NCBI GenBank assembly: GCA_022605425.2
Contig: CM061250.1
Coordinates: 1,054,001-1,118,000, forward strand
Direction: 5' to 3'
Source: Hamiltosporidium tvaerminnensis FI-OER-3-3
Lineage: Eukaryota; Fungi; Microsporidia
Length of the DNA stretch: 64,000 nt
Shown in pieces: positions 28,341 to 44,850 of the stretch. The position numbers were made by a program, and so were the translations under genes. The number at the start of each line of letters is the position of its first letter. Position 1 is the first letter of the stretch. Under the pieces are notes generated by a model. That model saw only the letters and a list, made by a program, of their open reading frames with translations, was not told the origin of the DNA and did not search any database.

Positions 28341-29233
28341 GAATGATAAATTATCTATAGAATAAAATTAGTGAAAAATAATTTGAAGTTACAATAAATC
28401 AGAATTACAAGCCAATAAGAAATTAAATTTATCAATTGAAAAGAAAATAAAAACACTAAAAATACTTTAAAAGAATATTTTTTGGTTATAAAAGTTTTAT
28501 ATAAAAGAAGCAAATATATAACAAAAAGAGATGAATTGTATGCAAAAAGGAAGTAATTTTGTATTTAAGAAATATTAAACCCATTAAATAGACATATATT
28601 TTATTTGAGGAAATAAAAATTTAAAAAAAAAGAAAAGTAATGGTTTGTTTAAATATAATTTTTTTTAATTATTATATCTGAAAAATTTAAACTTTTATTT
28701 ATGCATCTATATAATATAGCACGAGTTTGTTTAATAAGTTTGAAATTGTAAATATATTCAATAAATAAAAATTTTATACTTAATTTTTTTATAAATGTAT
28801 AAATAATTTATTTTAACCTTAAATTATTCCACATTTAATATAGGAATATATTTTTTTACTATTTCTATATTTTATAATTAATTTTCTTTTAAAATCTAAA
28901 CAAAAAAATTTAAATTTTCAATTATAAGAATTGTAAATTGTGCTGAAGTTTATATTTTTAGTTTATAAATCTTAATTTTATAGAATTATCTTCATAATAT
29001 TTTAGGTATTCTAAAAATAGAAACAAAACTTGATTTTTTTAAAATACTTTACCTTAATTCTAAATAAATGAAAACAAGGATCGTGTGTCTAATTTAAAGT
29101 AAAATCACAATAAATATTTCAAAAAATGAAAAATCTTGTATTTCGCATATCTAATTAAACTGATAAATTAAAAAATATTTTTTTAATTTAATGTATATAA
29201 ATAAAAATAAATTGAATTGCATGGACATTATGA

Positions 29234-30079
29234 TGTTTAAATAAAGAAAAAGAATTTTCTAATGTTGAGTATAATTGTAATTTATGTGGAAAGAGAAAAA
29301 AAAGTTGTAATTATAAGTCCAATCGTATAAATTTACCTGAAAAATACTGTTTTATAAGATATAGAAGGATTTTATATGTGATATGGATTATATGGTTTAT
29401 AGGAATAAGTGTATTGGGATATTTTATTATCAAACAAAAGAATCGTACTGATATAAAATTAGATACCGACTCTAATCTGATATCTCTATATAACAATTTC
29501 ATAGAAAATATTTCTTTATATAAATATATTTCGATTACGAGAATAGAAATTGATAGAAATACCAAATTAGGTAATTTTAAAACTAAAGAATTCAATGAAA
29601 AATCTTTTTGTATCGTAAATGAATCAGATGTAAAATTTTTAAAGATTTCTAGAAATGGAAATAAAATAGATGAATTTTGTGATGTAAACGATGGATCAAA
29701 TATACATAAATGGAGAAATTTTTACGATCCAAGAGATGGCGCAGACGCCCAAGGCAATCCTGGTAGTATAGGTGTATCCATTTTCAAATATGGTATAATT
29801 TGTCATGTCATATCCCCCAATATAGGAGATATCAATCAAAAAAATATTATAAAAAACGTTTTTTTCGAAATATACACCAAAGTTTATAATTTATCCAAAG
29901 AAAACAACATTTCGACAATAATTTTTCCTATTTTCAACACCAAAACACCAAATTTCCACAAATTAAAATATAAAAATGACAAAAACTCAATTTTATTTTA
30001 CAAGGAAATGTTTAATGGAATTGAAAAATTTATTTCTACTTTAAAAAAAGAAACTCCCAGAGTTATTTTCAATGTATAA
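29234..30079 (+). CDS. Divergent membrane-anchored macrodomain paralog (copy 1); start codon unresolved, possibly a pseudogene
   Basis: TM segment VIWIIWFIGISVLGYFII. CIVNES, FKYGIICHVISP, IIFPIF and VIFNV align with copies 2-4. The frame is open from 29234 but has no in-frame ATG before the TM; the ORF track starts at a GTG (29378). Confidence 0.65.
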   Translation, partial: CLNKEKEFSNVEYNCNLCGKRKKSCNYKSNRINLPEKYCFIRYRRILYVIWIIWFIGISVLGYFIIKQKNRTDIKLDTDSNLISLYNNFIENISLYKYISITRIEIDRNTKLGNFKTKEFNEKSFCIVNESDVKFLKISRNGNKIDEFCDVNDGSNIHKWRNFYDPRDGADAQGNPGSIGVSIFKYGIICHVISPNIGDINQKNIIKNVFFEIYTKVYNLSKENNISTIIFPIFNTKTPNFHKLKYKNDKNSILFYKEMFNGIEKFISTLKKETPRVIFNV

Positions 30080-30488
30080 ACCTCTGTAATGGAACGAAAC
30101 AACCAATAAATGTTTATTAAATAATATTTTACAAAAATTTACATTTTTTAAAACTCTAGATATTTAATTTTTTATTGGTGAAAAATATTTCTATTTCCTC
30201 ATTTAAACTTTTTTTGTTTTCCGTTTACTATTTTATTTCTCTATTTCTCTATTTCTCTATATTTTTCTATTTTTCTATTTTTCTATTTTTATATTCCTCT
30301 ATTTCTCTATTTCTTTATTTTTTTATGTTTCCGTTTACTATCTTATGAATTTTCATATTTTTATATTTTACACACTTTCATATTTCTCTATTTTCATATT
30401 TTCATATTTTCGTATAGACAACTCTTTATTCTTTCAATTCTATTCCTTTACTCCCATTTTTGGTATTCTCTTTAAATTACCCTTTGTA

Positions 30489-31466
30489 ATGACAATTCTT
30501 AAAGAGAAACACATCGAATTCCTTACAAAGGAAACTCAAACTCGAAACTTTCTTTATTTTTCAACAAAACCACTCAGACTAGCAACTATTTACTGGACAG
30601 TCTGTGCACTAAAAATGTTAAAAAAAACTGACATTTTAAAAGAAAAAAGAAATGAAATAATTTCTTACATTCTCAGCTGCCAGAACACAGATAAAGGTTT
30701 TGGTGCTTCTAAAGACTTTCCTTCTACAATTCTCAGTACATTCAACGCTCTTCAAATATTTTATATTTTAGAATATTTATATTTCGATAAAAAAACTATA
30801 AAATATATTTTAAGTAATTTTGACTCATCAGATGGTTCTTTTAAAAACGATACGGGCGGAGAAAAAGACACAAGATTTTCGTGTTGCGCAATACTTTCGT
30901 TACATTTGCTATTTCTGTTCAATAAATACGGAAAATTTGTATTCAAAAAGAAATTAAATCAACCAATAGATTACAAATATATAAAATATTTAGAAGGAAA
31001 AGGATTTAATGTAGAAAAATTCGTTCAAAATATTTTAAACTGTTGTAATCCAGATGGTGGCATCGGTAGCAAACCGGGAAGTGAATCACATGCAGCACAA
31101 ATATTTTGCTGTATTTCTTCTCTTCGTTCTTTAAATCTTATCGATATAATTGATTTAGAAAAAGTTAAAAAATTTTTAATTTTTAGACAAACGGAGAACG
31201 GTGGTTTAAATGGAAGACCAAATAAAAAAGAAGACGTCTGTTACTCTTTCTGGGTATTCTCTTCTCTCGTAATGATAAATTCAGATGATAAAATAGATAA
31301 AAATTCTTTAAAAGAATTTATACTCACTTGTCAATCTGAAGAAGGTGGATTCTCAGATAGGAAAGGACACGAACCAGATATATATCATACAATGTTTGCG
31401 TTAGCTGGTTTATACTTGTTAGGTAATACTGATTTAGAATCAATAGATCCTGGATTTTGTTTATAA
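30489..31466 (+). CDS. BET2: Geranylgeranyl transferase type II (Rab GGTase) beta subunit
   Basis: LRLATIYW, SCQNTDKGFG, GEKDTRFSCCA, NPDGGIGSKPGSESHAAQIFC, GGLNGRPNKKEDVCYSFW, GGFSDRKGHEPDIYHT. The true start is probably MTILKEKH (30489; CCC upstream). Confidence 0.92.
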   Translation: MTILKEKHIEFLTKETQTRNFLYFSTKPLRLATIYWTVCALKMLKKTDILKEKRNEIISYILSCQNTDKGFGASKDFPSTILSTFNALQIFYILEYLYFDKKTIKYILSNFDSSDGSFKNDTGGEKDTRFSCCAILSLHLLFLFNKYGKFVFKKKLNQPIDYKYIKYLEGKGFNVEKFVQNILNCCNPDGGIGSKPGSESHAAQIFCCISSLRSLNLIDIIDLEKVKKFLIFRQTENGGLNGRPNKKEDVCYSFWVFSSLVMINSDDKIDKNSLKEFILTCQSEEGGFSDRKGHEPDIYHTMFALAGLYLLGNTDLESIDPGFCL

Positions 31467-31876
31467 ATTGAATAAAATATTAATTGTATTTCCTTTGAAT
31501 ACTAAATTTCTATTAAATTTTCTTTAGAAAAAAAATCTATTTTGATATTTCGTAAGTCTACAATTATATGATTTTTATATTTTATAAAAATCTACTAGCT
31601 TAAACTAGTTTTGATATTTCGTAAGTCTAAAAGTTTATATGATTTTAATAATCTTAATATCTCATAAGAATTTAAAAAAAATATACTTAATTTAAAAAAT
31701 CTAAAAGTTAAAATATTTCGAATTTATAATCGTTTTATATTCTTTAAAGATATAACAAATTATTTAAAACATATTTAATAAACAGAATTTCGAATAGTCG
31801 CAAGATAACTGAATTAATATTTTCTATTTAAGTGATTTTGAATATTTAAAAAAATTATATTTTTGGTAATTGAGTG

Positions 31877-31936
31877 GAGTAGAAGAAAACGTATAAAAAT
31901 GGTAAAAATATTTTAACCCAGAATTTTATTAAATAA
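31877..31936 (+). mobile_element. ~60-bp 3'-terminal fragment of the non-LTR element
   Basis: gtagaagaaaacgtataaaaatggtaaaaatattttaacccagaattttattaaataa is nearly identical to the reverse complement of 41293..41352. Confidence 0.75.
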
Positions 31937-32431
31937 GTTAATTGATTGGAGATTAAATATTTTTTAAAATATTAAAAAATCACTAAAATAGAAAATATGA
32001 GAATGAAATTTAAAAAAAAAGAATTATAATCTTAATTTCTAGTAAATATTTCTTTTTAAAAATTCAGATTTTAATTATATTTTCACTAAATTTGAAATAA
32101 AATATATATTTATTAAGAAATATGGAATACACAAAATATGGTTGGTTTTAAGAATAAAATTTTTTTTTTAGATATTGATTTACGCGATTCAATGATATGA
32201 GTACGGTTTTGGATTATGAAAGGTTTATAAATCTATAAATTTGTTATAATTACAAATTGTGTAATAATTAATATTGTTTTTAATATACAAAGAAGAAAAA
32301 ATTTTAACAAAAAAGTTTTAAATATTTGAGCCAAAGAACCGTGGATTATGAAATATATAAAAAATGAAAACACATTTTGCAAAAAATTATTATAGAAAAG
32401 ACATATAAACATGGAAGATGTAAAAACTTTT

Positions 32432-33292
32432 TTAATGGCAAAATACATTTATGAATATTTTAATCTCATTTTTATCTGTTTCTGTTATAAAATCTGTAAT
32501 TCCTGAAAAGATTGCAGTTAAAAATTCCGATTTCTTGAAATTTTGACTTGCTTTAATATTACAGTTGAAACTTTCTGAAAATATAGGGAAAACGACCGTG
32601 TTAGCTTCTTTGTATCTGGCGAGGCGCAAAATATCAACATATATACGTTTAATAGCCCCTCTTAGTTCTTTTAAATCTTTAAAACGATTTTCCCTACCAA
32701 CCGAAGAAGCATCAGGAGCTCGAACATGAAATATAAAACCATATTGAAAGCTGGAAATGCCTGATATGGAATCTGCCAAATCTTTGCTATCATCATAATA
32801 CCCATAGTTTTCATCATCGTCTTCATTTTCATCATCATCTTCTTCATGTTTTAGTAATTCAAAGTTTTTCCAAATATCATCGTTTATTCCATCATTAGAT
32901 TCGACCCAACGAGTTATACCTCCATTTAAACCTGATTCCCCTGGTAACAGATCTGAAGAAGCAGAGTTGACAACCACAAGCGACCTTCTAAAATCTTGGT
33001 TTATTAAACCCATGTTTCCTTGTGTTGTATTTTCATCAAATTTAAAATCAAGAATACCGACATTGTACTTTTCTTTGAGAGTTTTTATAAACTCAGTCCT
33101 AATTTTCTTACAAATTATATTATCATCTAAGACATCGTTTTTCTTACTGCCAGAAGATGCAAATATTTCACAAGCCAAAACAATACAAACAAAACAAAGA
33201 ACAATACCAAGTAATACTACAAGTATTAAATTCTTATAATGCTTGATTTTTGAATTTTCAGAGTTCACCAAATTATCGTTTCTAATATTCAT
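32432..33292 (-). CDS. Membrane-anchored macrodomain protein (copy 2) with acidic insertion
   Basis: N-terminal TM LILVVLLGIVLCFVCIVLA; VVVNSASSDLLPGESGLNGGI; HVRAP; VVFPIFS; insertion EEDDDENEDDDENYGYYDD. Confidence 0.85.
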   Translation of the reverse strand: MNIRNDNLVNSENSKIKHYKNLILVVLLGIVLCFVCIVLACEIFASSGSKKNDVLDDNIICKKIRTEFIKTLKEKYNVGILDFKFDENTTQGNMGLINQDFRRSLVVVNSASSDLLPGESGLNGGITRWVESNDGINDDIWKNFELLKHEEDDDENEDDDENYGYYDDSKDLADSISGISSFQYGFIFHVRAPDASSVGRENRFKDLKELRGAIKRIYVDILRLARYKEANTVVFPIFSESFNCNIKASQNFKKSEFLTAIFSGITDFITETDKNEIKIFINVFCH

Positions 33293-34466
33293 TAAAAGCC
33301 GAATTTTTATTTCATTAAAATATTTTTTTATGGATAAAAATGTCTTGTTTTTTTAATTATCAGTTAATTTCTTATCTAATATATTCTTGTGTCACCAAAA
33401 AAAGAAATATTTAGATATTAAAAAATTATATTTCTAGATAAAATTATATAAAATATTTCAAGTAAAATAGAAATAACTATGATGGTTAAACTAAAAAATG
33501 ATTGCTATATTTTATAAAGTTGTCATTTTTAATACAATATTAAGCGAAACACATTGAAAGCTTAAAATTTATTAACAAGTTAATATGCAATTATGAAGCC
33601 AATTAAAACCAAGCTATAAGTTCATAAATGTTCGTTAGATTAATGCCTAATTGTATAACCTTCTTATAGATCAAAAACACAGTCTTTCATATCAAATATT
33701 GCAAAGAAATACTTTGATATTAGATTTTACCCGTACACAAAAAAGCTTATAAAATTAAAGTTACCTTTATGAATGAAGAACAATAATATCCATAATTTTA
33801 TAATTTAATTCTTCTTTGAAAGTAATTTACAGAAAAAAGGAAATTAATTATTCCACATATTGCATCTAATATAATTAAAAGAATAAAATATATTTATTAA
33901 ATTAACTAAATTAAAATTCTTTTCATTCGATAATAAAAGCAAATTAAATATTAAATATTAAATATATTAATTTTAATAAGAAAAGATTCAAAAAAAAATA
34001 AATTAATTTCAAACTATTCCTTTAAATTCTCAAGAACAACGGAATCTATTACATGTGTAAGTTCAAAATAAAAAAAAAACCGTAAGAAACAAACTACAAA
34101 ATATGATAATTAAATTATCCAAGTTTAAAAATATTACAACAATAGAATTCTAAATTTTGCAAATATATTTATGAGTTACTCAATAAAGAATAGTTAACTG
34201 CAAATTTTTACGTGAATATTTTTATTCATTTTTCTTACAAAAGTTAAAATATTTAATTTTTTTAAAAATATTTTCATTTGAATTACTTCTAACGTTTTTT
34301 GTTCATAAAGAACCAAATACATAATTTTAAAATAAAAGAGATTAAAAAATTACATGAGACTGTTAACAGATATACTAATAACAAATCAGAACCAACAATC
34401 ATAATAAAATGTAATAAAAAGGAAATTAATATATAAATTCGAAGGACACATACTTTACTTAACTTT

Positions 34467-35288
34467 CTAGATATTGAAATATACCTTAATATTCTTAAAC
34501 TCGGTCTTTTCAATAAATTTTTTTACTGCATTTTGAATTGCACAGAGAAACTCTGATTTTTTAAATCCTACTTTAGAATTCGACTGACAAAATAAATCAC
34601 CAGAAATTACTGAAAAAATTATATGACTGCATTCGTAATCATTTGCCATTCTAAGGCAGTTTTTATAAGCATTCGTCAACAATTCTGTGACTTCAGATAA
34701 GTTTTTGCATTGCTGCGGGTTTCCAACCAGTGAACCCTGTGGACCAATGACATGAAGTAGAATTCCACCATTGAAACGTGAATACGCAGCAAGACCAAGT
34801 TTTTTTGTACCTTCTGTCTGGCCTTCAGCACACGCGGTCAAATTATTCCAAACTTCACTGCTACCATTCTTAGACAAACCTTCCCTTTCTCTAACCCACA
34901 CCGTAATACCTTTATTCAAGCCGCCCAATCCCGGTAGCAGTTCCGGATTTGCTGCATTCACAATAGCCAAATGTGTAACAGCTTCATCAGTAAGACCCAT
35001 ACCAGCATAACTAAGACCGGTATCAAATCTAAATTTCAAAATATTAATTTTTTTTTGTCCTTGCAGGTAAGTCACAAATTCTTCTTGCATTTTACTACAA
35101 ACCTTTTCATCTGACAATATATTTTCTTGGCTTGTATTTTTCGTGTTTTCATTCTTATTCTTTTCTTTGAATAGCTTAACACCAATCAAGAGAAGCGTAG
35201 ACGCAAGCAAAAGGCAAATTAAAACTGCTGCTATATATTTTAAATTCCTATTTCTAACTTTATTCGTATCCTCAGAATTATTTGCCAT
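34467..35288 (-). CDS. Membrane-anchored macrodomain (MacroD-type, ADP-ribose-binding/hydrolase) protein (copy 3)
   Basis: TM YIAAVLICLLLASTLLLIGV; AIVNAANPELLPGLGGLNKGI; HVIGP; LTNAYKNCLRMA; IIFSVISGDLF. GGG directly precedes the ATG. Confidence 0.9.
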   Translation of the reverse strand: MANNSEDTNKVRNRNLKYIAAVLICLLLASTLLLIGVKLFKEKNKNENTKNTSQENILSDEKVCSKMQEEFVTYLQGQKKINILKFRFDTGLSYAGMGLTDEAVTHLAIVNAANPELLPGLGGLNKGITVWVREREGLSKNGSSEVWNNLTACAEGQTEGTKKLGLAAYSRFNGGILLHVIGPQGSLVGNPQQCKNLSEVTELLTNAYKNCLRMANDYECSHIIFSVISGDLFCQSNSKVGFKKSEFLCAIQNAVKKFIEKTEFKNIKVYFNI

Positions 35289-35807
35289 CCCTATACATAA
35301 ATTTTATATATTTATGTAATTTCATTGATAAAAATGTATTCCAAATATATTTAAAATACATTAAATATTTAATCGATTGATAAAAATGGAATATTAAGAG
35401 TAAATTAATTAAAAGCAATATAATATTAATAAATATATTTTATTTAACTTAACTAAAAAGTTCCAAAGAACAACAATAGAATTTATATCGAATGCTAGTA
35501 TTTATAAAACAATATAACTAAAAAAAATATTTTATAATTAAATCAATAATGATTCAAATAAAAGACTCAGTAAAAAAATTAATTAGTATTAACAAATTAA
35601 ATATTTGTGGAAGTAAAATAAATAAGCCAATAACTATCTTATTGTCAATGCTTTAATAAACTTGATGAGCTAATTGTTGTTTAAATTTTAGAGCGAGATA
35701 AAACTGCATTAATTTTGATTTTTCTGTGAGAATTTGTATAAAAAGAGAAAGTCTACAAAAGTCGCGTCATTTTTTCTTAAAAGTTGATAATTAATTGGTT
35801 ATTTTTC

Positions 35808-35972
35808 GATTAGAGACTGCAACTATACATGTAGAAAATTGGCATTTTAGGCAAGGTAGTTTAATCGTGGTTGTAGAATTTAAAGACTTAGAGCTAATGA
35901 GAAAAAACCTCTACAAAACCAGTAAAAGTAAGAAGCTAATTATACATGTTTTTATGACATTTCGAGGTCTGT
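35808..35972 (+). repeat. Old diverged copy of the middle of the dispersed element (~39200-39375)
   Basis: gactgcaactatacatgtagaaaattggcat vs gaccgcagctgaacatgtaggtaattgccat; aagacttagagc vs aagacttagcgc; ttatacatgtttttatgacatt vs ttatacctgttggtatgacatt. Confidence 0.6.
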
Positions 35973-36399
35973 ATGTAAGTTATATAAAGGCTAAGATATA
36001 TACTAGCCGCTGTCTATTCCTTATACCAGCATTTTAAATCGGAATAATGAGGTCTTAGTAGAGTTAACTAGGCAAGTTTTGCCTACAATAAACATAACGG
36101 GTAAAGAAATACACAAACATCAAAGTATTTCCTCGACAGAAATTGATTCTACACAGCTTTGTGATATAAGGCTGATATATGAATAATTTAAGTGATGCGG
36201 ATGGAATTAGACGTTGTGATCACCTATAAAAAATCGCAGAGCTGAGTAAGTGTCATAAAAGCAATATATATACCTTATCGTTACAAAAAAAGATTTTGGT
36301 TCTCAAAAAATCAACTCAAACGAAATTACATGACCAACCCTCTGAAGCATAATTTCTTTTATCGCTAAGAATGAGTATAAATTTAAAAGAAACAAAAAA

Positions 36400-38000
36400 C
36401 TTTCCATGAATAATTCATATTTAATTTATTCTTCACTAACGACGGAATACGTAACGTATGTTGAATATTTTTTTTAATAAATCATAGGTTATATTTTTGA
36501 CACTGGATAAATTTCTAAATATTATTTATTGTTACCAATCAGGCAAGCTCATGACGTTTAAGCTGTTGCAATTTCTTTCTGAATAAAATTATTTGCTGTA
36601 AAAAATTCTTGTGAATATAAAAAAGCCATGGTTTTGAACAAATCCCCAAAGTATTTGATTTTCAAGAAGCCTGCGTACCTGATTCAAGAAGGAAAAAAAT
36701 TAAAAACTTTAATTTCGGCCATTAGTTGTGCATATAGACAGCAAAAGTTGAATAGTAGTCATGTGACAAAGATCTTTTGGCTTGGGTTAAACACTAATAT
36801 TTTTCCGAACGAAAGTTCTAAGCTTTAACAGGTGAGAAAAATGCACTAAGGCTGTGTCTGGTGAAATATCGGCTATTCAAAACGCATGAAAAAATCTATG
36901 ACACATGAATTAGTGCAATAGAGCCTCTGATTAGTAAATGATCAAGCCTTGACAAAATTCAGCAGCCCTTTATATCTTACAATTGCATCGGAACTTTTTA
37001 AAGCAACCAAACTGACGAATTTATACATTAATACTATCCGAAAATATCACATGCGAAGAGATCAACCAAAAATATTTCGCGAAATAAATTATCCCATTTC
37101 TTTTTATAAGATGTCTGAATTCACTCTTAGAACTAAAATTTTTTTAAAAAAGCGAAATATTTCGATAAATGAGAAAATAAGTACTAAAAATCTAATCATA
37201 TTTTTGATCATAATAAGCAATTCTATACAAAAAGATCATTTTAGGCAACATTTAAAAAAGTACATTATTCTTCATTTAATATAGAATTTGAGATATGTAA
37301 AAGAAATTACTGAGATAAGAGGCATAGTAGAATGACAGCTTCAAATTCAAATTGAATAAATACATTGAGAAATAGAAAATTGAACAGGTAATCCGACGCA
37401 TATATATTTTAGTTTTAAAAGTAGCGTCTAATAAGAGTTAAAAAACCTTTTTGACCCAAAATAAGTGAGGAAGCTGCATTTCGAGCAATTTTTGAACATG
37501 ATATGTTCTTAATCAATATAATATCAAACATTTCGAGGAAATCGCATATCTATGAGCCATATATGAAACATTTATGAAGCTTTGGCTAAAAATAAGATCT
37601 ATCATAAAAATGATAAAAAAATACTATGATTATATAGATCAACACGAAATAAGCTTTAATAATGCGAAATTTCGAGGATATTGCTCTGAATTCTTAGAAT
37701 TCTTTTAATTAAAATAAATAAATATCCTTGTAACAGTAAGAAACATACAAATCGAAACTGTTTATTAAACTATATCGAGCCTAAAAAGGTATAAGTTAAG
37801 TGAAATACATGAAAATGTTCAAATATTGAATTCAATATACAAAATAGAATAGAAAAACTTATTTGAGAGTCATTATAATATTATAAAAAACTAGTGACTA
37901 ATTTGATTTTTTGTAAAAAGAGCAGTGTAATACAATATCTGATCCGGGTAAGAAAAAAAGTTCGGTTTATTCGGAATAGAAATGCATTTTTAATTCTCCA
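36400..38000 (+). mobile_element. Decayed Ty3/Gypsy RT-RNase H remnant
   Basis: KFSSPLYLTIAS resembles DFxKPFxLxTDAS; YPISFY resembles PIAFYS; KIFWLG resembles the RT xxFLG motif. The order is correct but the region is fragmented; boundaries approximate. Confidence 0.4.
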
Positions 38001-38992
38001 AAAGTTCCAAAAATTGAATAAATATGCTTAAACGTAGCGTCCTTATTAAAAAAAGTTGGAGAAATACTCAAAGAGAGATATAAAAAAAATTATTGATCAA
38101 TCTATTTATTCATTTTTATTAAAACAACAGTAAAATACAAACACTAAACAAATAGAGATCGCTCTGCTCAAATAATCCTCGAAATATGAGTGTGTATAAG
38201 TGAATTAGAAACTTTGGTTTTGTTCATCTGATATTCGAAAAGATATCCATATAGATCTATTTTAGACAAAATATAAATATAATAGCGCTTAATTAAGTCA
38301 TTTTTTAGGAGAAGATCTCTGCAGAATATTAAAAAAAACCAATCAAATATAACCTATTAGCAATGTGATTGGATTCTATTTTAAGGCTTAATGTAATTTA
38401 AATTTTATCTTATCATCTGAAAAATCTTTATAAAATCATAACTAAGAATTAATGTACGTGCTACAGTACAATTAGAAGTATTCATAGAGGCAAAAATACT
38501 GTAAAAACAACCATTCTCAGTTAAAAACTCCAGAATAAAACCTGCATTAAAAATGAATTCAAAATATAGTCAGAATAGAGCATTAATAGGATGCATACAA
38601 AAAACCGAACGTACAAAAAAACTTGTATTGCATATGCCTCCCTTCGAATATGAAAAGGGTAAGCAAACAAACACCAACATAAATAAACCCATAAGCGTAG
38701 AAAAAAGCCAAAATAAAAACATGATTTAGAATATAAAAAATAGAAAAATAAAAACGACGGAGAATCGAACGGTAAAGAAGTATCACATAGTGCAGGTATA
38801 ATCAAAATACATAATATTAAATAAATATTTTTTTTACTATAACATGCGACTAAACTTATAGATTTTTTTAAATTCAAGTTTATTAGTTCTTTTTTTATAT
38901 TACTTAGGATTTAATTCTTAAACATGTTTTTTGCTATTTCATCTCGAATTTACAAATAGAATAAGAAAATGAAAAATATAAAATTTTTATGT

Positions 38993-39735
38993 AAAAGGAG
39001 GTGGAGGGAGGATAACCACATAAAAAACTTTCTGCTTGGCAATGAGTGTGTGAAACTGGTGTGAGATCATTGTTTGGATTTTTGGTGGGAATACAACCAC
39101 ACTACATCTTCGGTTGTTCCATGGGAGTTGTTATGAGGAGGAGAGGTCTAAGAAATGGTGAAACTTTTTCTACGAATTTATTTGTAGTTTTTTATGTAAC
39201 CAGATTGCAGACCGCAGCTGAACATGTAGGTAATTGCCATGTAAAAGCATGGAAACCTAGCCTTGCTCACTCGGGTTAGAAGACTTAGCGCCTGGGAGAT
39301 ATAAAAATAAAACCCATTAAAAGCCGGGAGAGCTAAGTAGCAGGTTATACCTGTTGGTATGACATTGCACTGTCTAGGTGGACCCCATGTAAATCTCTGA
39401 AATATATCTTAGCTAGAAGTTTATTGGGTTCAGAAAGTGTAGAGTAAGTGGGAATGCTGCATAGTCTTGGGGGAGCCCAGGGGGGGGGGGGCTTCGGCCT
39501 TCGATCACACTCCATGCAACGGACATTAACGAACTCCGGGCAACTGCCTCGCCTATTAATTAGGTTCTACACACCTGGTAGATGAAAGGCTTTGGGACGT
39601 AGGTATCGCAGGGGTTACCGATGGAGTGTTGGGGTAGCAGTTATTTATGTTAAACCTAGAACTGCGTTAATGTCATGAAAACAAATATAACACTTGCCAC
39701 TATTGTAAAAAGATGTGATATTTTTAAATAAAGTG
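38993..39735 (+). repeat. Most complete copy of a GC-richer ~740-bp dispersed non-coding element
   Basis: Sharp GC rise relative to flanks, no credible ORF, and partial homologs at 23.5, 25.2, 35.8, 48.4 and 58.2 kb. Confidence 0.8.
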
Positions 39736-40023
39736 ATTATGTAAAAGGTAGAGTTAAGAGCACATTAAAACTTCAAGATCTTTAAAAAATAAATGGTTAA
39801 AAAATGTGAATAACGGCTACTAAATATCAATACTTTGATTTTTCAAGGCGAAAAATATAAAAATAGAATAAATCAATATTCACATGGAATAATAAACCAA
39901 CAAGACTATATAAAATAAATTTAATCAATAAACACAAAATGAAAAGGTGTAAATATAGTTTACAATATTAAATTGTAAAAATAAGTGAAATAAATAAAGA
40001 AACATAAACTTTTATTTATGTTT

Positions 40024-40854
40024 CTAAACGTTGAAATAAACCTTAATGGTACCGAAATCATTTTCGACAAAATTTTTCACTGCATCATGAACAGCTAGAA
40101 GAAACTCGGATTTTTTAAATCCCATTTTAGCATTACCATCACAATATAGACCACTGGAAACCACAGTGTAAATAATATGACTGCATTGTTGCTCAATTGC
40201 GACCTTAAGACAATTTCCGTACGCCTTTGTCAATACTTCAGTGACTTCAGACAAATTTTTACATTGATGTAAATTCCCAACCAATTTAGCTTGTGGGCCG
40301 ATAACATGAAGAATAATACCTCCTTCAAATTGCGAATAAGCCGCAAGACCTAGGTTTTTGGTGTCTTTTATCTGTCCTTCAGTATATTCAGTTTTTCCAT
40401 ACCATCTTTCATTGCCATCTGACGCATCTATACCCTTTTTATCCAATACCCACGATGTAATACCTTTATTTAACCCACCATATCCGGGAGATAATTCCGT
40501 ATTTGCTGCATTTACAACAGCTAATTTGGTTACATTTTCTCCAGAAAGTCCCATATCTTCATAAGTAACACCGGAATCAAATTTGAATTTCAAAATTTTT
40601 ATATTTTGTTTTTCTTGTAGGTATTCGATAAAAATTTCTTCCATTTTACTACAAACCTTCGCATCATCGTACTTAGTACCATTTCCATCATCATTCGACT
40701 GCTTTGTAGTACTAGCTTCTGTGCCAAAAAAACTCATCAAAATATATCCTATCAATATGACACCACCTCCAATCAGAAGAGCAAAAAGAAAAGTTTTAAT
40801 AATCTTGAATTTATTTTTACTCGCCGAAATTTTTTCTTCCGTATGTTTTGTCAT
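40024..40854 (-). CDS. Membrane-anchored macrodomain (MacroD-type) protein (copy 4; most canonical motifs)
   Basis: TM FLFALLIGGGVILIGYILMSFF; AVVNAANTELSPGYGGLNKGI; HVIGP; LTKAYGNCLKVA; VVSSGLYC. Close paralog of copy 3; GGG directly precedes the ATG. Confidence 0.9.
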   Translation of the reverse strand: MTKHTEEKISASKNKFKIIKTFLFALLIGGGVILIGYILMSFFGTEASTTKQSNDDGNGTKYDDAKVCSKMEEIFIEYLQEKQNIKILKFKFDSGVTYEDMGLSGENVTKLAVVNAANTELSPGYGGLNKGITSWVLDKKGIDASDGNERWYGKTEYTEGQIKDTKNLGLAAYSQFEGGIILHVIGPQAKLVGNLHQCKNLSEVTEVLTKAYGNCLKVAIEQQCSHIIYTVVSSGLYCDGNAKMGFKKSEFLLAVHDAVKNFVENDFGTIKVYFNV

Positions 40855-41290: not shown

Positions 41291-44200
41291 TTTTTATTTA
41301 ATAAAATTCTGGGTTAAATATTTTTTACCATTTTTATATGTTTTCTTCTACCTCTTTAACCACTATTGTCTCTTCTTCCAAATCCGACTCTCATTTATGT
41401 TATTGGTCGGTTCCTCTAAGTGGTTCCTCTTGTGAAATAAGGGGTGTATTATTTTTTGGTTTTAAATTTTAACACCATCTTCCCTTGCTTCTTTTAAAGG
41501 GGGTTTGGTTTCTGTCTCTGATCTCTAATAACACCCATTGACGCCCCCGCCCTCGGCATTTGGTCCGACTAGTCCCTTCGTCGATCAAGGAAATAGTTTC
41601 GACTGTTTTTTAGTACTATAGACTGAATGTATGCTTCTACATTCTGGGTATTTTAGTCTTTTAGATGAGATTTATGGTATTTTGTCATACCGTCCCAGGT
41701 CATCCTAGGGATTATTCACACTACACTTTAAATAAGGCCCAACTCATTGGCTAGCAGGTCTACTCTTGTTTTTGTTTCACTATTTGAAGTGAATCTTGGG
41801 AGTGATTCCTACTTCATGAGTGTTTCTTTTTTCTTCTTATCTAAAATAAATATGTCCGGTCTGTTTTCGAATTTTAACATCAGTTTTAATTCTGGTGTCC
41901 ACCTTATCTCTGCATACTCTTTCGAATTTTTGACTGAGTGGCTCCTTATTCGTTTTGAAGACTTAAACTTTATCTATTTAGAAGGAGAAGGTGTAGGCAT
42001 CTAACCACTTATTTGCGTCTAGTGTAATCATGGCCTAGCTTTTTTGCATCTAGTTGTAGATGATCCCAGTCTTCCAGACTTCCCGCATGTTGACACACCA
42101 TCTGCTCCCCAGAATACATTTCTATCCTGGATATAGCAGAACACAGCTTCATTTCGTGGCCTAATATTTCTCTTAGCCATCTTGAGAGTCACTAACACTA
42201 CAGCTCATTTTGACTTGCCTTATATAACTTTGAATGAGTTTTCGTTTTTTATTTCGTTTATAGTTTTGAGTTGAGCTTTTCTAAACTTTCTTAGTGACTT
42301 CTTCACCAACCTGTACTTTACTTTTAGAAGCCTTTTATTAGTGCAAGTGGGTTTTTTATTATTTCCACCTTGAGGATTGCTGCTCGTCTAGTTGTTTTTT
42401 TCTTTTTCCAGACAATCCAAGAGTTGCAGAAGCATATGTTCGCTTCGCAACTCACACTATGTAGACCTCTTCCAGTTCTGTTCTAGGAAGATACACCGCT
42501 CTTTACATCCTGGGCGGAGATGTATCTTTTTTTACCAACACCGCACGCACTGCCTCATCTAACTTAGAGAAGTCAGCCGGTTCAGTCGAAGTACTCCTTG
42601 TGGTAGTTGATTACGATATCGCATGTTGATTGATTGCAGAAAATAATTTTTGCATTTAATCTACTGTGAGTCTTTCACTCTTGATATAAGTTTGTCTGTC
42701 TTTTCAATGAGCTACGTGTTGGGATTCCTCTGCTATCTTCTATTATTCCTAAATATTTGTAAACACTAACACCTTCTAGAGAGTGCAGTATCTTCAACAC
42801 GTATCATTTGTGGCTGACTTCTCTTTGTTAATCTCTAAGCCAATCACCTCTAAAATTCCTTTGCCTGCCTGTCATAGCACTCAATGTGGAGCTGTCTTTT
42901 GCAGGAGCTTAAGATCATCAATAAACAAGAGATGATTAGTAGAATGGGATTCTGCATCTGTTTGTCTGTTTTTGTGTTTTTTCATTAGCTTTCGGCTTAA
43001 TGGATCCATCACACAATAACAAGGTGACAGACTATCTCCTTGTGATCCCTCTCATCTCTTGCTCTGTTTTTTCAGGCCCTACTGTTATCATTTTCCATTT
43101 TGATATAATTACCTTAATAAATTTGGATCCATCGGTATTGGTTTTATGATTGGTTAATAAGTGTCTATTGATCATAGCTTTTTAACATCTCCTGTTGCCT
43201 TAGTTATTTCCATACCTTTTTTAAGGCTATTGTGGCCTGTCTTTCGCCCCTGCCCTCTTCCGCCCCTAGTTGGTTTCGCAGCACCTCGCCTTTCCCCATT
43301 TGACGACTTTCGTCCACACTTTGTCGTTAACTTTAGAGGTTGGACATACAGTGATTGGCCTGTGTCGGCCTCTTCGTGGATTCCTTTCGGTATCATACGT
43401 GCCCGCGTAAACCAATCGTTGGGTGTTCCTTCTAACATTACTTTACATATCATAAGTTTTGTGAAGAGTTGTGTTTCTTAATGAAAAAATTGTAAATACC
43501 ATCAATCGCGCTTTCCATTAGGGAGCCAATTATGTATTCCAATTCTCAGTGAGGAACGTGGTCGGATGATTATCTGATACAAATGGAATCAAATAATCAT
43601 CGTCGTGACTGTCTCTTTTTGTTCCACATTGTGGCCAAAACTCACTTTCCGGCTAACCACTGCTCGGTTCCCACGCTCGGTACCCGTAAATCGACCTCGG
43701 AAAGCTCAACTCGTCTTTGGATTGCTTCCCCTGCTCGTTTTTTTTCGTAACATTAGCTCTTTCTTACTAAAGCCTCGAAGATCGTTCGCTGCTCGTTTAT
43801 TAACTCTGCTGTTTTTTAGGCTCTTCGTTTCCGAGTGGGGCTTTTCCTGCTTCGGCTTTTCGGGGATCTTTGGAAGTACTAACTTGATTTTACTTTCTGT
43901 GTTCCTTCCAGCGGATCTGGCTTCTCTTTCGTGTTGTCGTCTGCATCCTGCGCGCTTGCTGTATAGCGGCTTCCGTATTGACTCGGTACTGGCTCCTGCA
44001 TATTCCCGACTACTCGATTTATGGATCCGAACTTTACTATCACCAATTATTTGGATGTTTTCTGTTCGCCCCACTTTTCATTTCGTTCTCGGATTTCTTT
44101 GTTTTACTCAGAATTTATTCTCGGTTTATGTACTCCGTGGTGTCGGTCAGGTGTGTTGCGAGACAGTGGCGATTCTCGTCGCTTCCATTTCTTCTGGTTT

Positions 44201-44630
44201 TCATCCTTTCCATCTCACTTTGTGCCAATTTTTTAACACTTCGGTTTCGTGCGCCGAATTTTATTATAGTACCTGTGGCTCTGTCCGCCATTTTTGGCAT
44301 TCTTCAACCTTGTCTGTACTGCAAACAATTCGAGGCCATCCTTCGGGTCGGCTGTTCGGAATCGAATATCGTCCGCTGCCATTGCCTGTTACCTTCCGGA
44401 TGCTGGTCGGGGCTTGTCTGTCGTCGATGGCTCGCACGCGACTTCACCGAAGGGGAACTGGTGCATTGGGGGTGGTGTCGCCACTTTTTGCTTTTACGCT
44501 GTTTGGCTTGGTGGTGGGGTGTTTTGTTGTGTGGGGGTCGCCGTGGGTGCCTTTTGTTCCCTTCCCTTTTTCCCTCTCGTCGTTTGCGCCTTTTTTTGGT
44601 TTTTCTTTTCGCTTTTCTTCTCCCATTTTA
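41291..44630 (-). mobile_element. Decayed non-LTR retrotransposon with RT and C-terminal restriction-like endonuclease (R2/R4/NeSL-type architecture)
   Basis: Minus-strand fragments QGDSLSP..VMDPLSRKL, NHLLFIDDLKLL, VYKYLGIIED, LRSEHMLLQLLDCLEK, CYIQDRNVFWGADGVCQH, RPDIFILDKKK and terminal ESDLEEETIVVKEVEENI*, followed by AATAAA. Many frameshifts. The GC-rich 5' part begins at ATG 44626. Confidence 0.9.
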
Positions 44631-44635
44631 AAAAA

Positions 44636-44850
44636 ACAGAAAAAAATAAAAAATAAAAAATAAAAAATAAAAAATAAAAAATAAAAAATAAAAAATGAAA
44701 ATAAAACAGAAAAAAAGTAAAATTTTGAAAATAAAAAATGAAAATTATGAAAATAAAAAATGAAAATTATAGAAATAAAAATAAAACTGAAAATAAAATA
44801 TGAAAATTATAGAAATAAAAATAAAACTGAAAATAATAAAAGAAAATACA
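44636..44850. repeat. (AAAAAT)n microsatellite and degenerate A-rich repeats
   Basis: About nine near-perfect aaaaat units, then gaaaataaaaaatgaaaattat duplications. Confidence 0.85.

What the first reader, a model, noticed from the sequence alone, without database searches (positions are those of the whole stretch)
29234..40854. Local expansion of four membrane-anchored macrodomain proteins: a candidate parasite-surface anti-ADP-ribosylation system
Seen: four paralogs share a short basic N-terminus, one TM helix, a linker and a macrodomain (VNAAN..L.PG.GGL..GI / HVIGP / AY.NCL..A / F..IS..LF). Established: MacroD-type domains bind or remove ADP-ribose and are normally soluble, and viral macrodomains (coronavirus Mac1, alphavirus nsP3) reverse host PARP-mediated defence. 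Inference: positive charges before the TM predict type II topology with the domain outside the parasite, and cysteines shared by copies 2-4 (KVC/IIC after the TM, LFC/LYC/FNC) could form a disulfide. In an intracellular parasite this would face the host cytosol or vacuole, where it could erase host ADP-ribose marks or scavenge NAD+ metabolites. I know of no described family like this in microsporidia, but could not search.
Basis: partly seen in the sequence, partly recalled or inferred. Interest (0 to 1): 0.88.

Follow-up and report, generated by a model that had tools for sequence, protein, structure and literature searches.

The report
Membrane-anchored macrodomain gene family, microsporidian
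A Daphnia-infecting microsporidian (Hamiltosporidium) carries seven genes, four of them in this window, for single-pass membrane proteins ending in a divergent ADP-ribose-binding "macro" domain, and their closest relatives are exported lipoproteins of intracellular bacteria, which suggests a role at the host interface that is not yet shown.

Summary
The observation largely holds. The window encodes three intact genes: c2 (32432-33292, minus strand), c3 (34467-35288, minus) and c4 (40024-40854, minus). A fourth gene, c1 (29221-30079, plus strand), has its start codon out of frame. All four have an N-terminal hydrophobic anchor and a C-terminal macro fold.

- **Fold:** the c3 model has pLDDT 89.7 and matches E. 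coli YmdB at Z 12.2. The model of the c1 orthologue matches at Z 11.7.
- **Family size:** the genome (Hamiltosporidium, 98% identical to H. magnivora) holds seven members on three contigs and no other Pfam Macro match.
- **Motifs:** only c3 and c4 in the window keep the catalytic Asn and near-canonical phosphate loops. c1 and c2 have lost them.
- **Relatives:** the family sits in a strongly supported clade (100/99) with TM-anchored proteins of Anncaliia and Tubulinosema and with lipoproteins of Amoebophilaceae/Cytophagales. This clade is separate from canonical soluble macrodomains.
- **Topology:** The exported bacterial relatives support an outward-facing domain indirectly.
- **Disulfide and expression:** neither could be tested.
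- **Closest described analogue:** Toxoplasma MAF1, a tandemly expanded, membrane-anchored macro-fold effector family.

UniProt already auto-labels the orthologues "Macro domain-containing". I found no paper describing the family. Verdict: a new variant of a known kind, of moderate interest.

The parts
29221..30079 (+). c1: the most divergent paralogue. The ATG at 29221 is out of frame with the long open frame that runs 29234-30079. The anchor is at about 29369-29431 and the macro-fold domain at about 29465-30076. The catalytic Asn and both phosphate loops are lost.
   Evidence: a one-base net length difference from the intact 285 aa H. magnivora orthologue P0018; profile E 1.7e-18; orthologue model pLDDT 79, YmdB Z 11.7, rmsd 3.1 over 146 aa; motifs.
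32432..33292 (-). c2: intact, 286 aa. The anchor is at 33170-33229 and the macro-like domain at about 32435-33073, with an acidic Tyr-containing insertion. The catalytic Asn is replaced by Ser and loop 2 is degenerate.
   Evidence: (E 7.4e-32 against c3). No Pfam match. Substitutions against H. magnivora fit neutrality, with 2 synonymous of 12.
34467..35288 (-). c3: intact, 273 aa. The anchor is residues 18-37 (35178-35237), the linker is about residues 38-58, an N-terminal helix follows, and the macro domain is residues 78-273 (34470-35057). It keeps Asn114, the Gly-rich loop 1 (G120-N125) and loop 2 (I228-C234).
   Evidence: Pfam Macro 22.0 bits, equal to the cut-off; pLDDT 89.7; YmdB Z 12.2, rmsd 2.7 over 144 aa. 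Under purifying selection against H. magnivora, with 9 synonymous of 16 changes and binomial p 0.002.
40024..40854 (-). c4: intact, 276 aa. The anchor is residues 21-45 (40720-40794) and the macro domain is at about 40027-40614. It keeps the catalytic Asn and near-canonical loops, and has the clearest N-in charge bias (-5).
   Evidence: Pfam Macro 21.2 bits; 52% identity to c3; 23.8 bits in the genome scan.

Best explanation
The four genes belong to a seven-gene Hamiltosporidium family of single-pass membrane proteins. Each has an N-terminal signal-anchor, a flexible charged linker and a divergent MacroD-like macrodomain. This part is shown. The family lies in a distinct macrodomain clade whose members nearly all carry export or anchor signals: TM anchors in the microsporidia Hamiltosporidium, Anncaliia and Tubulinosema, and lipoprotein signal peptides in Amoebophilaceae/Cytophagales, which are intracellular bacterial symbionts. 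This is also shown. What follows is inferred. The anchor most likely enters the ER with the N-terminus in the cytosol, so the macrodomain ends up on the exoplasmic side, meaning the secretory lumen and then the parasite surface. In meronts lying directly in host cytoplasm, that side faces the host. There c3 and c4, which keep the catalytic Asn, the Gly-rich loop 1 and loop 2, would bind ADP-ribose conjugates made by the host and probably hydrolyse them. c1 and c2 have lost these residues and would act as non-catalytic binders or are decaying.
For: Fold. Anchor in all seven members. Clade of 44 rows supported 100/99 and separated from canonical GGGV macrodomains, with the bacterial lipoprotein subclade also at 100/99. 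Invariant lipobox Cys. Named bacterial relatives are Ca. Amoebophilus sp., Amoebophilaceae and a Cytophagales MAG. TM-anchored orthologues in Tubulinosema and Anncaliia. Motif retention in c3, c4, the C3 copy and C12a. Purifying selection on c3. Synteny and intact copies in H. magnivora. No PARP was found in the parasite genome, so any protein substrate would be host-made (but the control was silent). The patchy spread, the expansion and the fast divergence fit a host-interaction family.
Against: Topology is not established. The charge difference across the anchor ranges from -5 to +6, and long, very hydrophobic anchors with short N-termini can also insert with the N-terminus outside. No expression or localisation data could be obtained. 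The MacroD Asp/His pair is replaced by Asn125/Thr129 in c3, so hydrolase activity is uncertain. Pfam scores are borderline, and NCBIfam matches lie far below their cut-offs. This is the only macrodomain family in the genome, which also has one sirtuin, so a housekeeping role is possible. Hamiltosporidium genomes are reported to be shaped by drift (PMC6944219).
Confidence: 0.45

Rival explanations
1. This is a cytosol-facing housekeeping enzyme. The anchor inserts with the N-terminus outside and the C-terminus inside, as in microsomal P450s. The macrodomain then sits on the parasite's own cytosolic face of the ER or plasma membrane and clears O-acetyl-ADP-ribose from the parasite's sirtuin, or other ADP-ribose metabolites.
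For: Basic clusters of 5-6 K/R in 15 residues lie directly after the anchor in c3, the C3 copy, both C12 copies, Tubulinosema and Anncaliia. This is the only Pfam Macro family in the genome, and one SIR2 gene is present. c3 is under purifying selection.
Against: The sister clade consists of exported lipoproteins. N-terminal flanks carry a net +2 to +5 charge in nearly all members, which disfavours translocating them. Seven diverging copies, three of them without the catalytic Asn, are unexpected for a housekeeping enzyme. Family members came from only a few microsporidian lineages among 96 hits. No Tpt1 was found.
Confidence: 0.22
2. This is a MAF1-like adaptor. The macro fold is used mainly as a protein- or ligand-binding module at the host-parasite interface, for example to tether host organelles or host proteins, and not as a hydrolase. 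This is how the tandemly expanded Toxoplasma MAF1 family works.
For: Toxoplasma MAF1A (6bxt/6bxs) matches the c3 model at Z 11.3 over 169 aligned residues. MAF1 has a signal peptide plus a TM domain, sits on the vacuole membrane, is present in 4-10 tandem copies and has paralogues with different functions (PMC4004538; PMC7999873). Three of the seven Hamiltosporidium copies lack the catalytic Asn but stay intact in two species. c2 carries a unique acidic insertion.
Against: c3, c4, the C3 copy and C12a keep the ADP-ribose-contacting motifs. Identity to MAF1 is only 14%, with no sequence-level relationship beyond the shared fold. No interaction data exist.
Confidence: 0.2
3. This is a drift-driven expansion with little function. 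The array reflects segmental duplication in a bloated genome under weak selection, and most copies are on the way to becoming pseudogenes.
For: Hamiltosporidium genomes are reported to carry long segmental duplications and an excess of nonsynonymous change (PMC6944219). c1 is frameshifted at its start in this assembly. c2 changes fit neutrality. Motifs are degenerate in c1 and c2.
Against: c3 shows purifying selection (p 0.002). c1, c2 and c3 are intact and syntenic in H. magnivora. Paralogues are 20-52% identical yet all seven keep long open frames. The architecture is conserved in Anncaliia and Tubulinosema.
Confidence: 0.08

Closest known systems
Toxoplasma gondii MAF1 (mitochondrial association factor 1; PDB 6bxs/6bxt)
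   Same: It comes from an intracellular eukaryotic parasite. The locus is tandemly expanded and diversifying. The protein has an N-terminal secretory signal, one TM segment and a C-terminal macro fold. Some paralogues bind ADP-ribose and others have a different function. It matches the c3 model at Z 11.3 over 169 residues.
   Different: There is no detectable sequence relationship (14% identity). MAF1 has a cleaved signal peptide followed by a separate TM segment and is delivered from dense granules to the vacuole membrane. The Hamiltosporidium proteins have a single N-terminal anchor. MAF1 acts by binding host mitochondrial import proteins, whereas c3 and c4 keep hydrolase-type motifs. The two are analogues, not family members.
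MacroD-type macrodomains (E. coli YmdB, Oceanobacillus MacroD, human MacroD1/2, archaeal AF1521)
   Same: These give the best structural and profile matches. c3 and c4 share the VNAAN Asn, the Gly-rich loop 1, the H-x-x-G-P strand and the I-S-x-G loop 2.
   Different: The known proteins are soluble. The Asp/His pair of MacroD is Asn/Thr here. The first Gly of the triple-Gly loop is Leu, Tyr or Met, and there is a one-residue insertion. An extra Trp-containing insert and an N-terminal helix are present. All NCBIfam equivalog scores lie far below their cut-offs.
Viral macrodomains (coronavirus Mac1, alphavirus nsP3)
   Same: They are parasite-encoded macrodomains placed where host PARP products occur. 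The c3 model matches CHIKV nsP3 at Z 10.8. The P-x-x-L-P-G-x-G stretch after VNAAN resembles the alphavirus loop, by my own reading of the motifs.
   Different: The viral domains are part of cytosolic replicase polyproteins and are not membrane-anchored ectodomains. No activity data exist for the microsporidian proteins.
Lipoprotein macrodomains of Amoebophilaceae/Cytophagales (uncharacterised; annotated only as 'macro domain-containing protein')
   Same: They belong to the same macrodomain clade (100/99 support), share the Trp insert and the C-terminal F-x-K-x-E-F and I-L-N-N-W-like motifs, carry an N-terminal export signal, and come from obligate intracellular organisms.
   Different: They are bacterial and have a lipobox Cys in place of a TM anchor. 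Their loops are more canonical (GGGG-I/L-N/D-G; I-S-T-x-I-F-A). They are single genes among housekeeping neighbours.

Membership tests
Macro domain superfamily (Pfam PF01661) | Three-layer alpha/beta/alpha macro fold | tested here: met
   The c3 model has pLDDT 89.7. The top 50 Foldseek matches are macrodomains or macro-fused crystallisation constructs, and the model matches YmdB at Z 12.2, rmsd 2.7 A over 144 aa. The c1 orthologue model has pLDDT 79 and Z 11.7.
Macro domain superfamily (Pfam PF01661) | Score at or above the Pfam gathering cut-off (22 bits) | tested here: inconclusive
   c3 scores 22.0 bits, c4 21.2 (23.8 in the genome scan), the C3 copy 28.8, and c1 and c2 give no match. The family profile matches solved macrodomains at E 3.4e-7.
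Macro domain superfamily (Pfam PF01661) | ADP-ribose binding | not testable with these tools
   This needs ITC or co-crystallisation. Only motif conservation could be assessed.
MacroD-type hydrolases | Catalytic Asn, the second N of VNAAN, equivalent to Mac1 N40 and CHIKV N24 (established knowledge) | tested here: met
   Present in c3 (Asn114), c4, the C3 copy and C12a. Replaced by Ser in c2 and by Asp in c1 and C12b.
MacroD-type hydrolases | Asp and His after the triple-Gly loop (GGGVD-G-x-I-H) | tested here: not met
   c3 has Asn125 and Thr129 at these positions. The whole clade has N/D and L/T there. AF1521 and the viral macrodomains also lack this pair yet are active (established knowledge), so activity is not excluded.
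Type II (N-in, C-out) signal-anchor membrane proteins | Single N-terminal hydrophobic segment of about 19-25 residues | tested here: met
   All seven paralogues and the Anncaliia and Tubulinosema orthologues have one, with Kyte-Doolittle 19-residue means of 1.97-3.50.
Type II (N-in, C-out) signal-anchor membrane proteins | More positive N-terminal than C-terminal flank (positive-inside rule) | tested here: inconclusive
   Delta(C-N) is -5, -3 and -3 for c4, c2 and c1, but +1 for c3, 0 to +1 for several others and +6 for the C3 copy. No dedicated topology predictor was available.
Toxoplasma MAF1 family | Sequence homology to MAF1a/b | tested here: not met
   The match is structural only, at 14% identity. 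MAF1 was absent from the profile matches to solved structures at E up to 10.
Exported macrodomain clade (defined here) | Placement inside the clade that joins microsporidian TM-anchored and Amoebophilaceae lipoprotein macrodomains | tested here: met
   The clade of 44 rows has 100/99 support and includes all seven Hamiltosporidium rows. The placement of c1 within the clade is unresolved because of its long branch (2.06).

The most novel reading that the evidence does not exclude
An exported macrodomain clade has moved between intracellular bacteria (Amoebophilaceae) and microsporidia. Both display it on their surface inside host cells to erase host ADP-ribose marks. This would be a cellular-parasite counterpart of viral Mac1/nsP3, with pseudoenzyme paralogues recruited as binders.
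Probability: 0.2. Interest if true: 0.8.

Novelty: new variant of a known kind. Interest (0 to 1): 0.55.

Why it matters
Macrodomains that reverse host ADP-ribosylation are established virulence factors of RNA viruses. For cellular parasites, the only studied membrane-anchored macro-fold family is Toxoplasma MAF1. A second, independent family in microsporidia that shares ancestry with lipoproteins of intracellular bacteria would suggest that exporting a macrodomain to the host interface is a recurrent strategy of intracellular life. It would also provide a tractable set of natural active-like and inactive-like paralogues to test. If the domain instead faces the parasite cytosol, the family is an ordinary membrane-tethered metabolite-clearing enzyme and interest is low.

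Tried and rejected
- **Expression:** The look-up of sequencing runs listed four holders of unknown kind and many unindexed RNA runs.
- **Word-based protein searches:** these found almost nothing. The exhaustive profile search was what worked.
- **The search for related loci on genome contigs:** it failed twice for lack of a conserved stretch and once found no relative. Bacterial taxonomy therefore rests on three named proteins.
- **Positive-inside analysis:** inconclusive.
- **Disulfide Cys64-Cys234:** Both Cys are confined to one subclade, so there is no independent covariation.
- **Monophyly of microsporidian rows:** the AU test gave p 0.029. I set this aside because the group was chosen after seeing the tree and unnamed metagenomic rows were forced outside it. 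The direction of any transfer is unresolved.
- **PARP search of the genome:** no match, but the prokaryotic controls were also silent, so absence is not shown.
- **Bacterial gene neighbourhoods:** these are housekeeping genes and give no functional hint.
- **Atlas feature search:** the best scores were 0.81, which is only a lead.
- **The look-up of encoding contigs for c4:** nothing on record.
- **Contamination or a bacterial contig:** rejected. The genes share the genome's AT-richness and lie between eukaryotic genes, syntenic in H. magnivora.
- No spliced models or joined sequences were used, and no contig was taken for human.


Full report
**What is in the sequence.**
The window is AT-rich (about 24% GC) and gene-sparse. 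Four related ORFs lie between 29.2 and 40.9 kb:
- c1: open frame 29234-30079, plus strand.
- c2: 32432-33292, minus strand, 286 aa.
- c3: 34467-35288, minus strand, 273 aa.
- c4: 40024-40854, minus strand, 276 aa.

A Rab geranylgeranyltransferase beta-subunit gene (30345-31466, Pfam Prenyltrans E 1.9e-84) separates c1 from c2. c3 is 52% identical to c4, 30% to c2 and 20% to c1.

**Which organism.**
c3 is 98% identical to a Hamiltosporidium magnivora hypothetical protein that UniRef auto-names "Macro domain-containing protein". The assembly has 21.6 Mb in 17 contigs, and the window is C5:1054001-1118000. An H. magnivora contig carries c3, c2, the prenyltransferase gene and an intact 285 aa c1 in the same order. 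The array therefore predates the divergence of the two genomes compared.

**State of c1.**
In this assembly the c1 ATG at 29221 is in a different frame from the long open frame and runs into a stop at 29242. Two H. magnivora assemblies have one base less in net length here and read straight through. The remaining 281 codons are 99.6% identical between the two genomes. The break is therefore either very recent or an assembly error. I describe it only and propose no change.

**Family size.**
A profile of six domain sequences finds exactly seven places in the genome:
- the four in the window;
- one on C3, about 25 kb from the contig end;
- two on C12, which have linkers of about 100 aa (Lys/Glu-rich in one of them).

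c1 was not in the profile, yet it scores E 1.7e-18. Every member begins with one hydrophobic segment of 20-25 residues. The Pfam Macro model matches nothing else in the genome.

**Is it a macrodomain?**
Pfam alone is borderline: c3 scores 22.0 bits, exactly the cut-off; c4 scores 21.2; c1 and c2 give nothing; the C3 copy scores 28.8. The family profile matches solved macrodomains, namely S. aureus SauMacro at E 3.4e-7, a Methanobrevibacter macrodomain, and AF1521 at 2.3e-5.

AlphaFold2 with a 61-row alignment gives c3 a mean pLDDT of 89.7. Foldseek's top matches are essentially all macrodomains at probability 1.00. VIA-align gives E. coli YmdB Z 12.2, rmsd 2.7 A over 144 residues, and 206 chains reach Z 8 or more. 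The most divergent copy, folded as its intact natural orthologue, also gives a macro fold (pLDDT 79; YmdB Z 11.7). Its first 40 residues are low-confidence, so the Cys-rich N-terminus has no assigned fold. The macro fold is established for the family. NCBIfam equivalog models match only far below their cut-offs, so the family belongs to no curated bacterial subfamily.

**Active-site motifs.**
By established knowledge, the second Asn of VNAAN (Mac1 N40, CHIKV N24) positions the distal ribose, and two loops bind the phosphates: GGG-V and I-S-T/S-G-I/V-Y/F-G. Their state in each copy is as follows:

| Copy | Second Asn of VNAAN | Loop 1 | Loop 2 |
|---|---|---|---|
| c3 | kept (Asn114) | P-G-L-G-G-L-N | I-S-G-D-L-F-C |
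| c4 | kept | near-canonical | V-S-S-G-L-Y-C |
| C3 copy | kept | similar to c3 | similar to c3 |
| C12a | kept | similar to c3 | similar to c3 |
| c2 | Ser | not scored | degenerate |
| c1 | Asp | gone | gone |
| C12b | Asp | not scored | not scored |

The MacroD Asp/His pair is Asn125/Thr129 in c3. AF1521 and the viral macrodomains lack that pair too. c3 and c4 are therefore plausible ADP-ribose binders or hydrolases, and c1 and c2 are not plausible hydrolases. This agrees with earlier first-stage notes on the same stretch.

**Selection.**
Divergence from H. magnivora is small. c3 has 9 synonymous changes out of 16 where 21% would be expected (binomial p 0.002; dN/dS 0.21). c2 has 2 of 12, which is indistinguishable from neutrality. 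c1 has 2 of 3. c3 is clearly constrained, and the data cannot decide for c1 or c2.

**Relatives.**
An exhaustive profile search of 1.84 billion representatives gave 96 hits at E up to 0.001.
- Named eukaryotic relatives are from Tubulinosema ratisbonensis and Anncaliia algerae. They have the same layout of N-terminal TM, linker and domain.
- A large set of hits are bacterial proteins with a signal peptide ending in an invariant Cys, that is, lipoproteins. The named ones are Candidatus Amoebophilus sp., an Amoebophilaceae bacterium and a Cytophagales MAG. They sit among housekeeping genes.
- In a maximum-likelihood tree, 44 rows form a clade with 100/99 support on a long stem, apart from canonical GGGV macrodomains. 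The clade holds all seven Hamiltosporidium copies, the Anncaliia/Tubulinosema group and the lipoproteins.
- Inside that clade the lipoproteins form a subclade (100/99) that is sister to Anncaliia/Tubulinosema (98/85). The grouping (c2,(C3copy,(c3,c4))) is fully supported. c1 and the two C12 copies are unresolved at the base.
- At least 34 of the 44 rows carry an N-terminal anchor or export signal.
- An AU test of microsporidian monophyly gave p 0.029. I do not lean on it, for the reasons given under Tried and rejected.
- At least one transfer between bacteria and microsporidia is implied. Its direction is open.

**Topology.**
Counting charges in the 15 residues on each flank gives C-minus-N differences of -5 (c4), -3 (c2, c1), +1 (c3, C12a, C12b, Anncaliia), 0 (Tubulinosema) and +6 (C3 copy, whose start is uncertain). 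Many members have a Lys-rich cluster right after the anchor. The rule therefore does not decide the question.

Two other observations favour an exoplasmic domain. The N-termini look like signal-peptide n-regions, with net charges of +2 to +5. The sister clade is exported in bacteria. I put the exoplasmic orientation at roughly 60%.

The suggested disulfide (Cys64 in the helix after the linker, Cys234 at the end of loop 2) could not be measured. Both Cys are confined to the (c2, C3copy, c3, c4) subclade, which counts as one evolutionary event.

**Function and comparison with what is known.**
The structural list also contains Toxoplasma MAF1A bound to ADP-ribose (Z 11.3, 169 residues aligned). 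MAF1 has several matching features:
- It is a secreted, TM-bearing protein of the parasitophorous vacuole membrane.
- It is present in 4-10 tandem copies.
- Its paralogues differ in function (PMC4004538; PMC7999873).

It is the closest described analogue in layout and genomic behaviour, though it is not a sequence relative.

I found no paper on macrodomains in Hamiltosporidium or other microsporidia, on the specific locus tags, or on Amoebophilus macro proteins. A fungal PARP survey reports PARP1 in only one of 12 microsporidian genomes (bioRxiv 10.64898/2026.07.25.740670). My own PARP scan was negative, but its control was silent. One sirtuin is present, which keeps a housekeeping role possible.

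**Verdict.**
The genes and the fold are real, and the family is larger and older than a local four-copy expansion. The outward-facing, host-directed eraser model is possible and gains indirect support from the lipoprotein relatives, but it is not shown. This is a new variant of a known kind, namely membrane-anchored and exported macrodomains of intracellular organisms. It is worth a localisation and activity experiment.

**Constraints.**
I worked beside them and sent none of their letters to any search tool afterwards.

Noticed in passing
window 29221-29244: The c1 start codon is out of frame with the rest of the gene, and the ATG frame stops at 29242. Two H. magnivora assemblies are one base shorter in net length here and encode an intact 285 aa protein. 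This is either a recent break or an assembly error.
   Followed up: yes
window 29234-29368 (c1 N-terminus; P0018 residues 5-49): c1 has a cytosolic-looking N-terminus of about 49 aa, basic and with several Cys spaced like a small zinc knuckle. The AF2 model is low-confidence here (pLDDT 45-51), so no fold is assigned.
   Followed up: partly
window 32770-32850: c2 has a unique acidic Asp/Glu/Asn-rich insertion with Tyr residues, in the loop after the conserved Trp of the domain.
   Followed up: partly
window 30345-31466 vs L008:6815-7792: The Rab GGTase-beta gene has no differences from H. magnivora over 325 codons, whereas c3, about 3 kb away, differs at 16 of 819 bases. Divergence is uneven along the locus. 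The 373 aa ORF in the window starts 48 codons upstream of the 325 aa gene call in H. magnivora. That extension is hydrophobic and low-complexity and is probably not coding. A TCTATTT-like microsatellite lies directly upstream.
   Followed up: partly
L010, L011-L013, L014; P0122, P0127: Amoebophilaceae/Cytophagales bacteria encode lipoprotein macrodomains with an invariant lipobox Cys and canonical ADP-ribose loops, among housekeeping genes. I found no description of these exported bacterial macrodomains in the literature searched.
   Followed up: partly
G000:C12:790693-791340 and C12:2388280-2388930 (L005, L006): Two family members have linkers of about 100 aa (Lys/Glu-rich in L005) between the anchor and the domain. 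One keeps the catalytic Asn and the other has Asp.
   Followed up: partly
L007:5977-6597 (P0007): A metagenomic contig with 29% GC encodes a soluble version of the same clade, about 200 aa with no anchor. It comes from an unidentified organism, and its neighbours have no Pfam domains.
   Followed up: no
They lie in the c2-c3 spacer and were not examined or searched.
   Followed up: no
window 42001-44000: GC rises to 0.41 against about 0.24 elsewhere. An ORF at 43605-44663 lies here, and a first-stage note calls it a non-LTR element.
   Followed up: no
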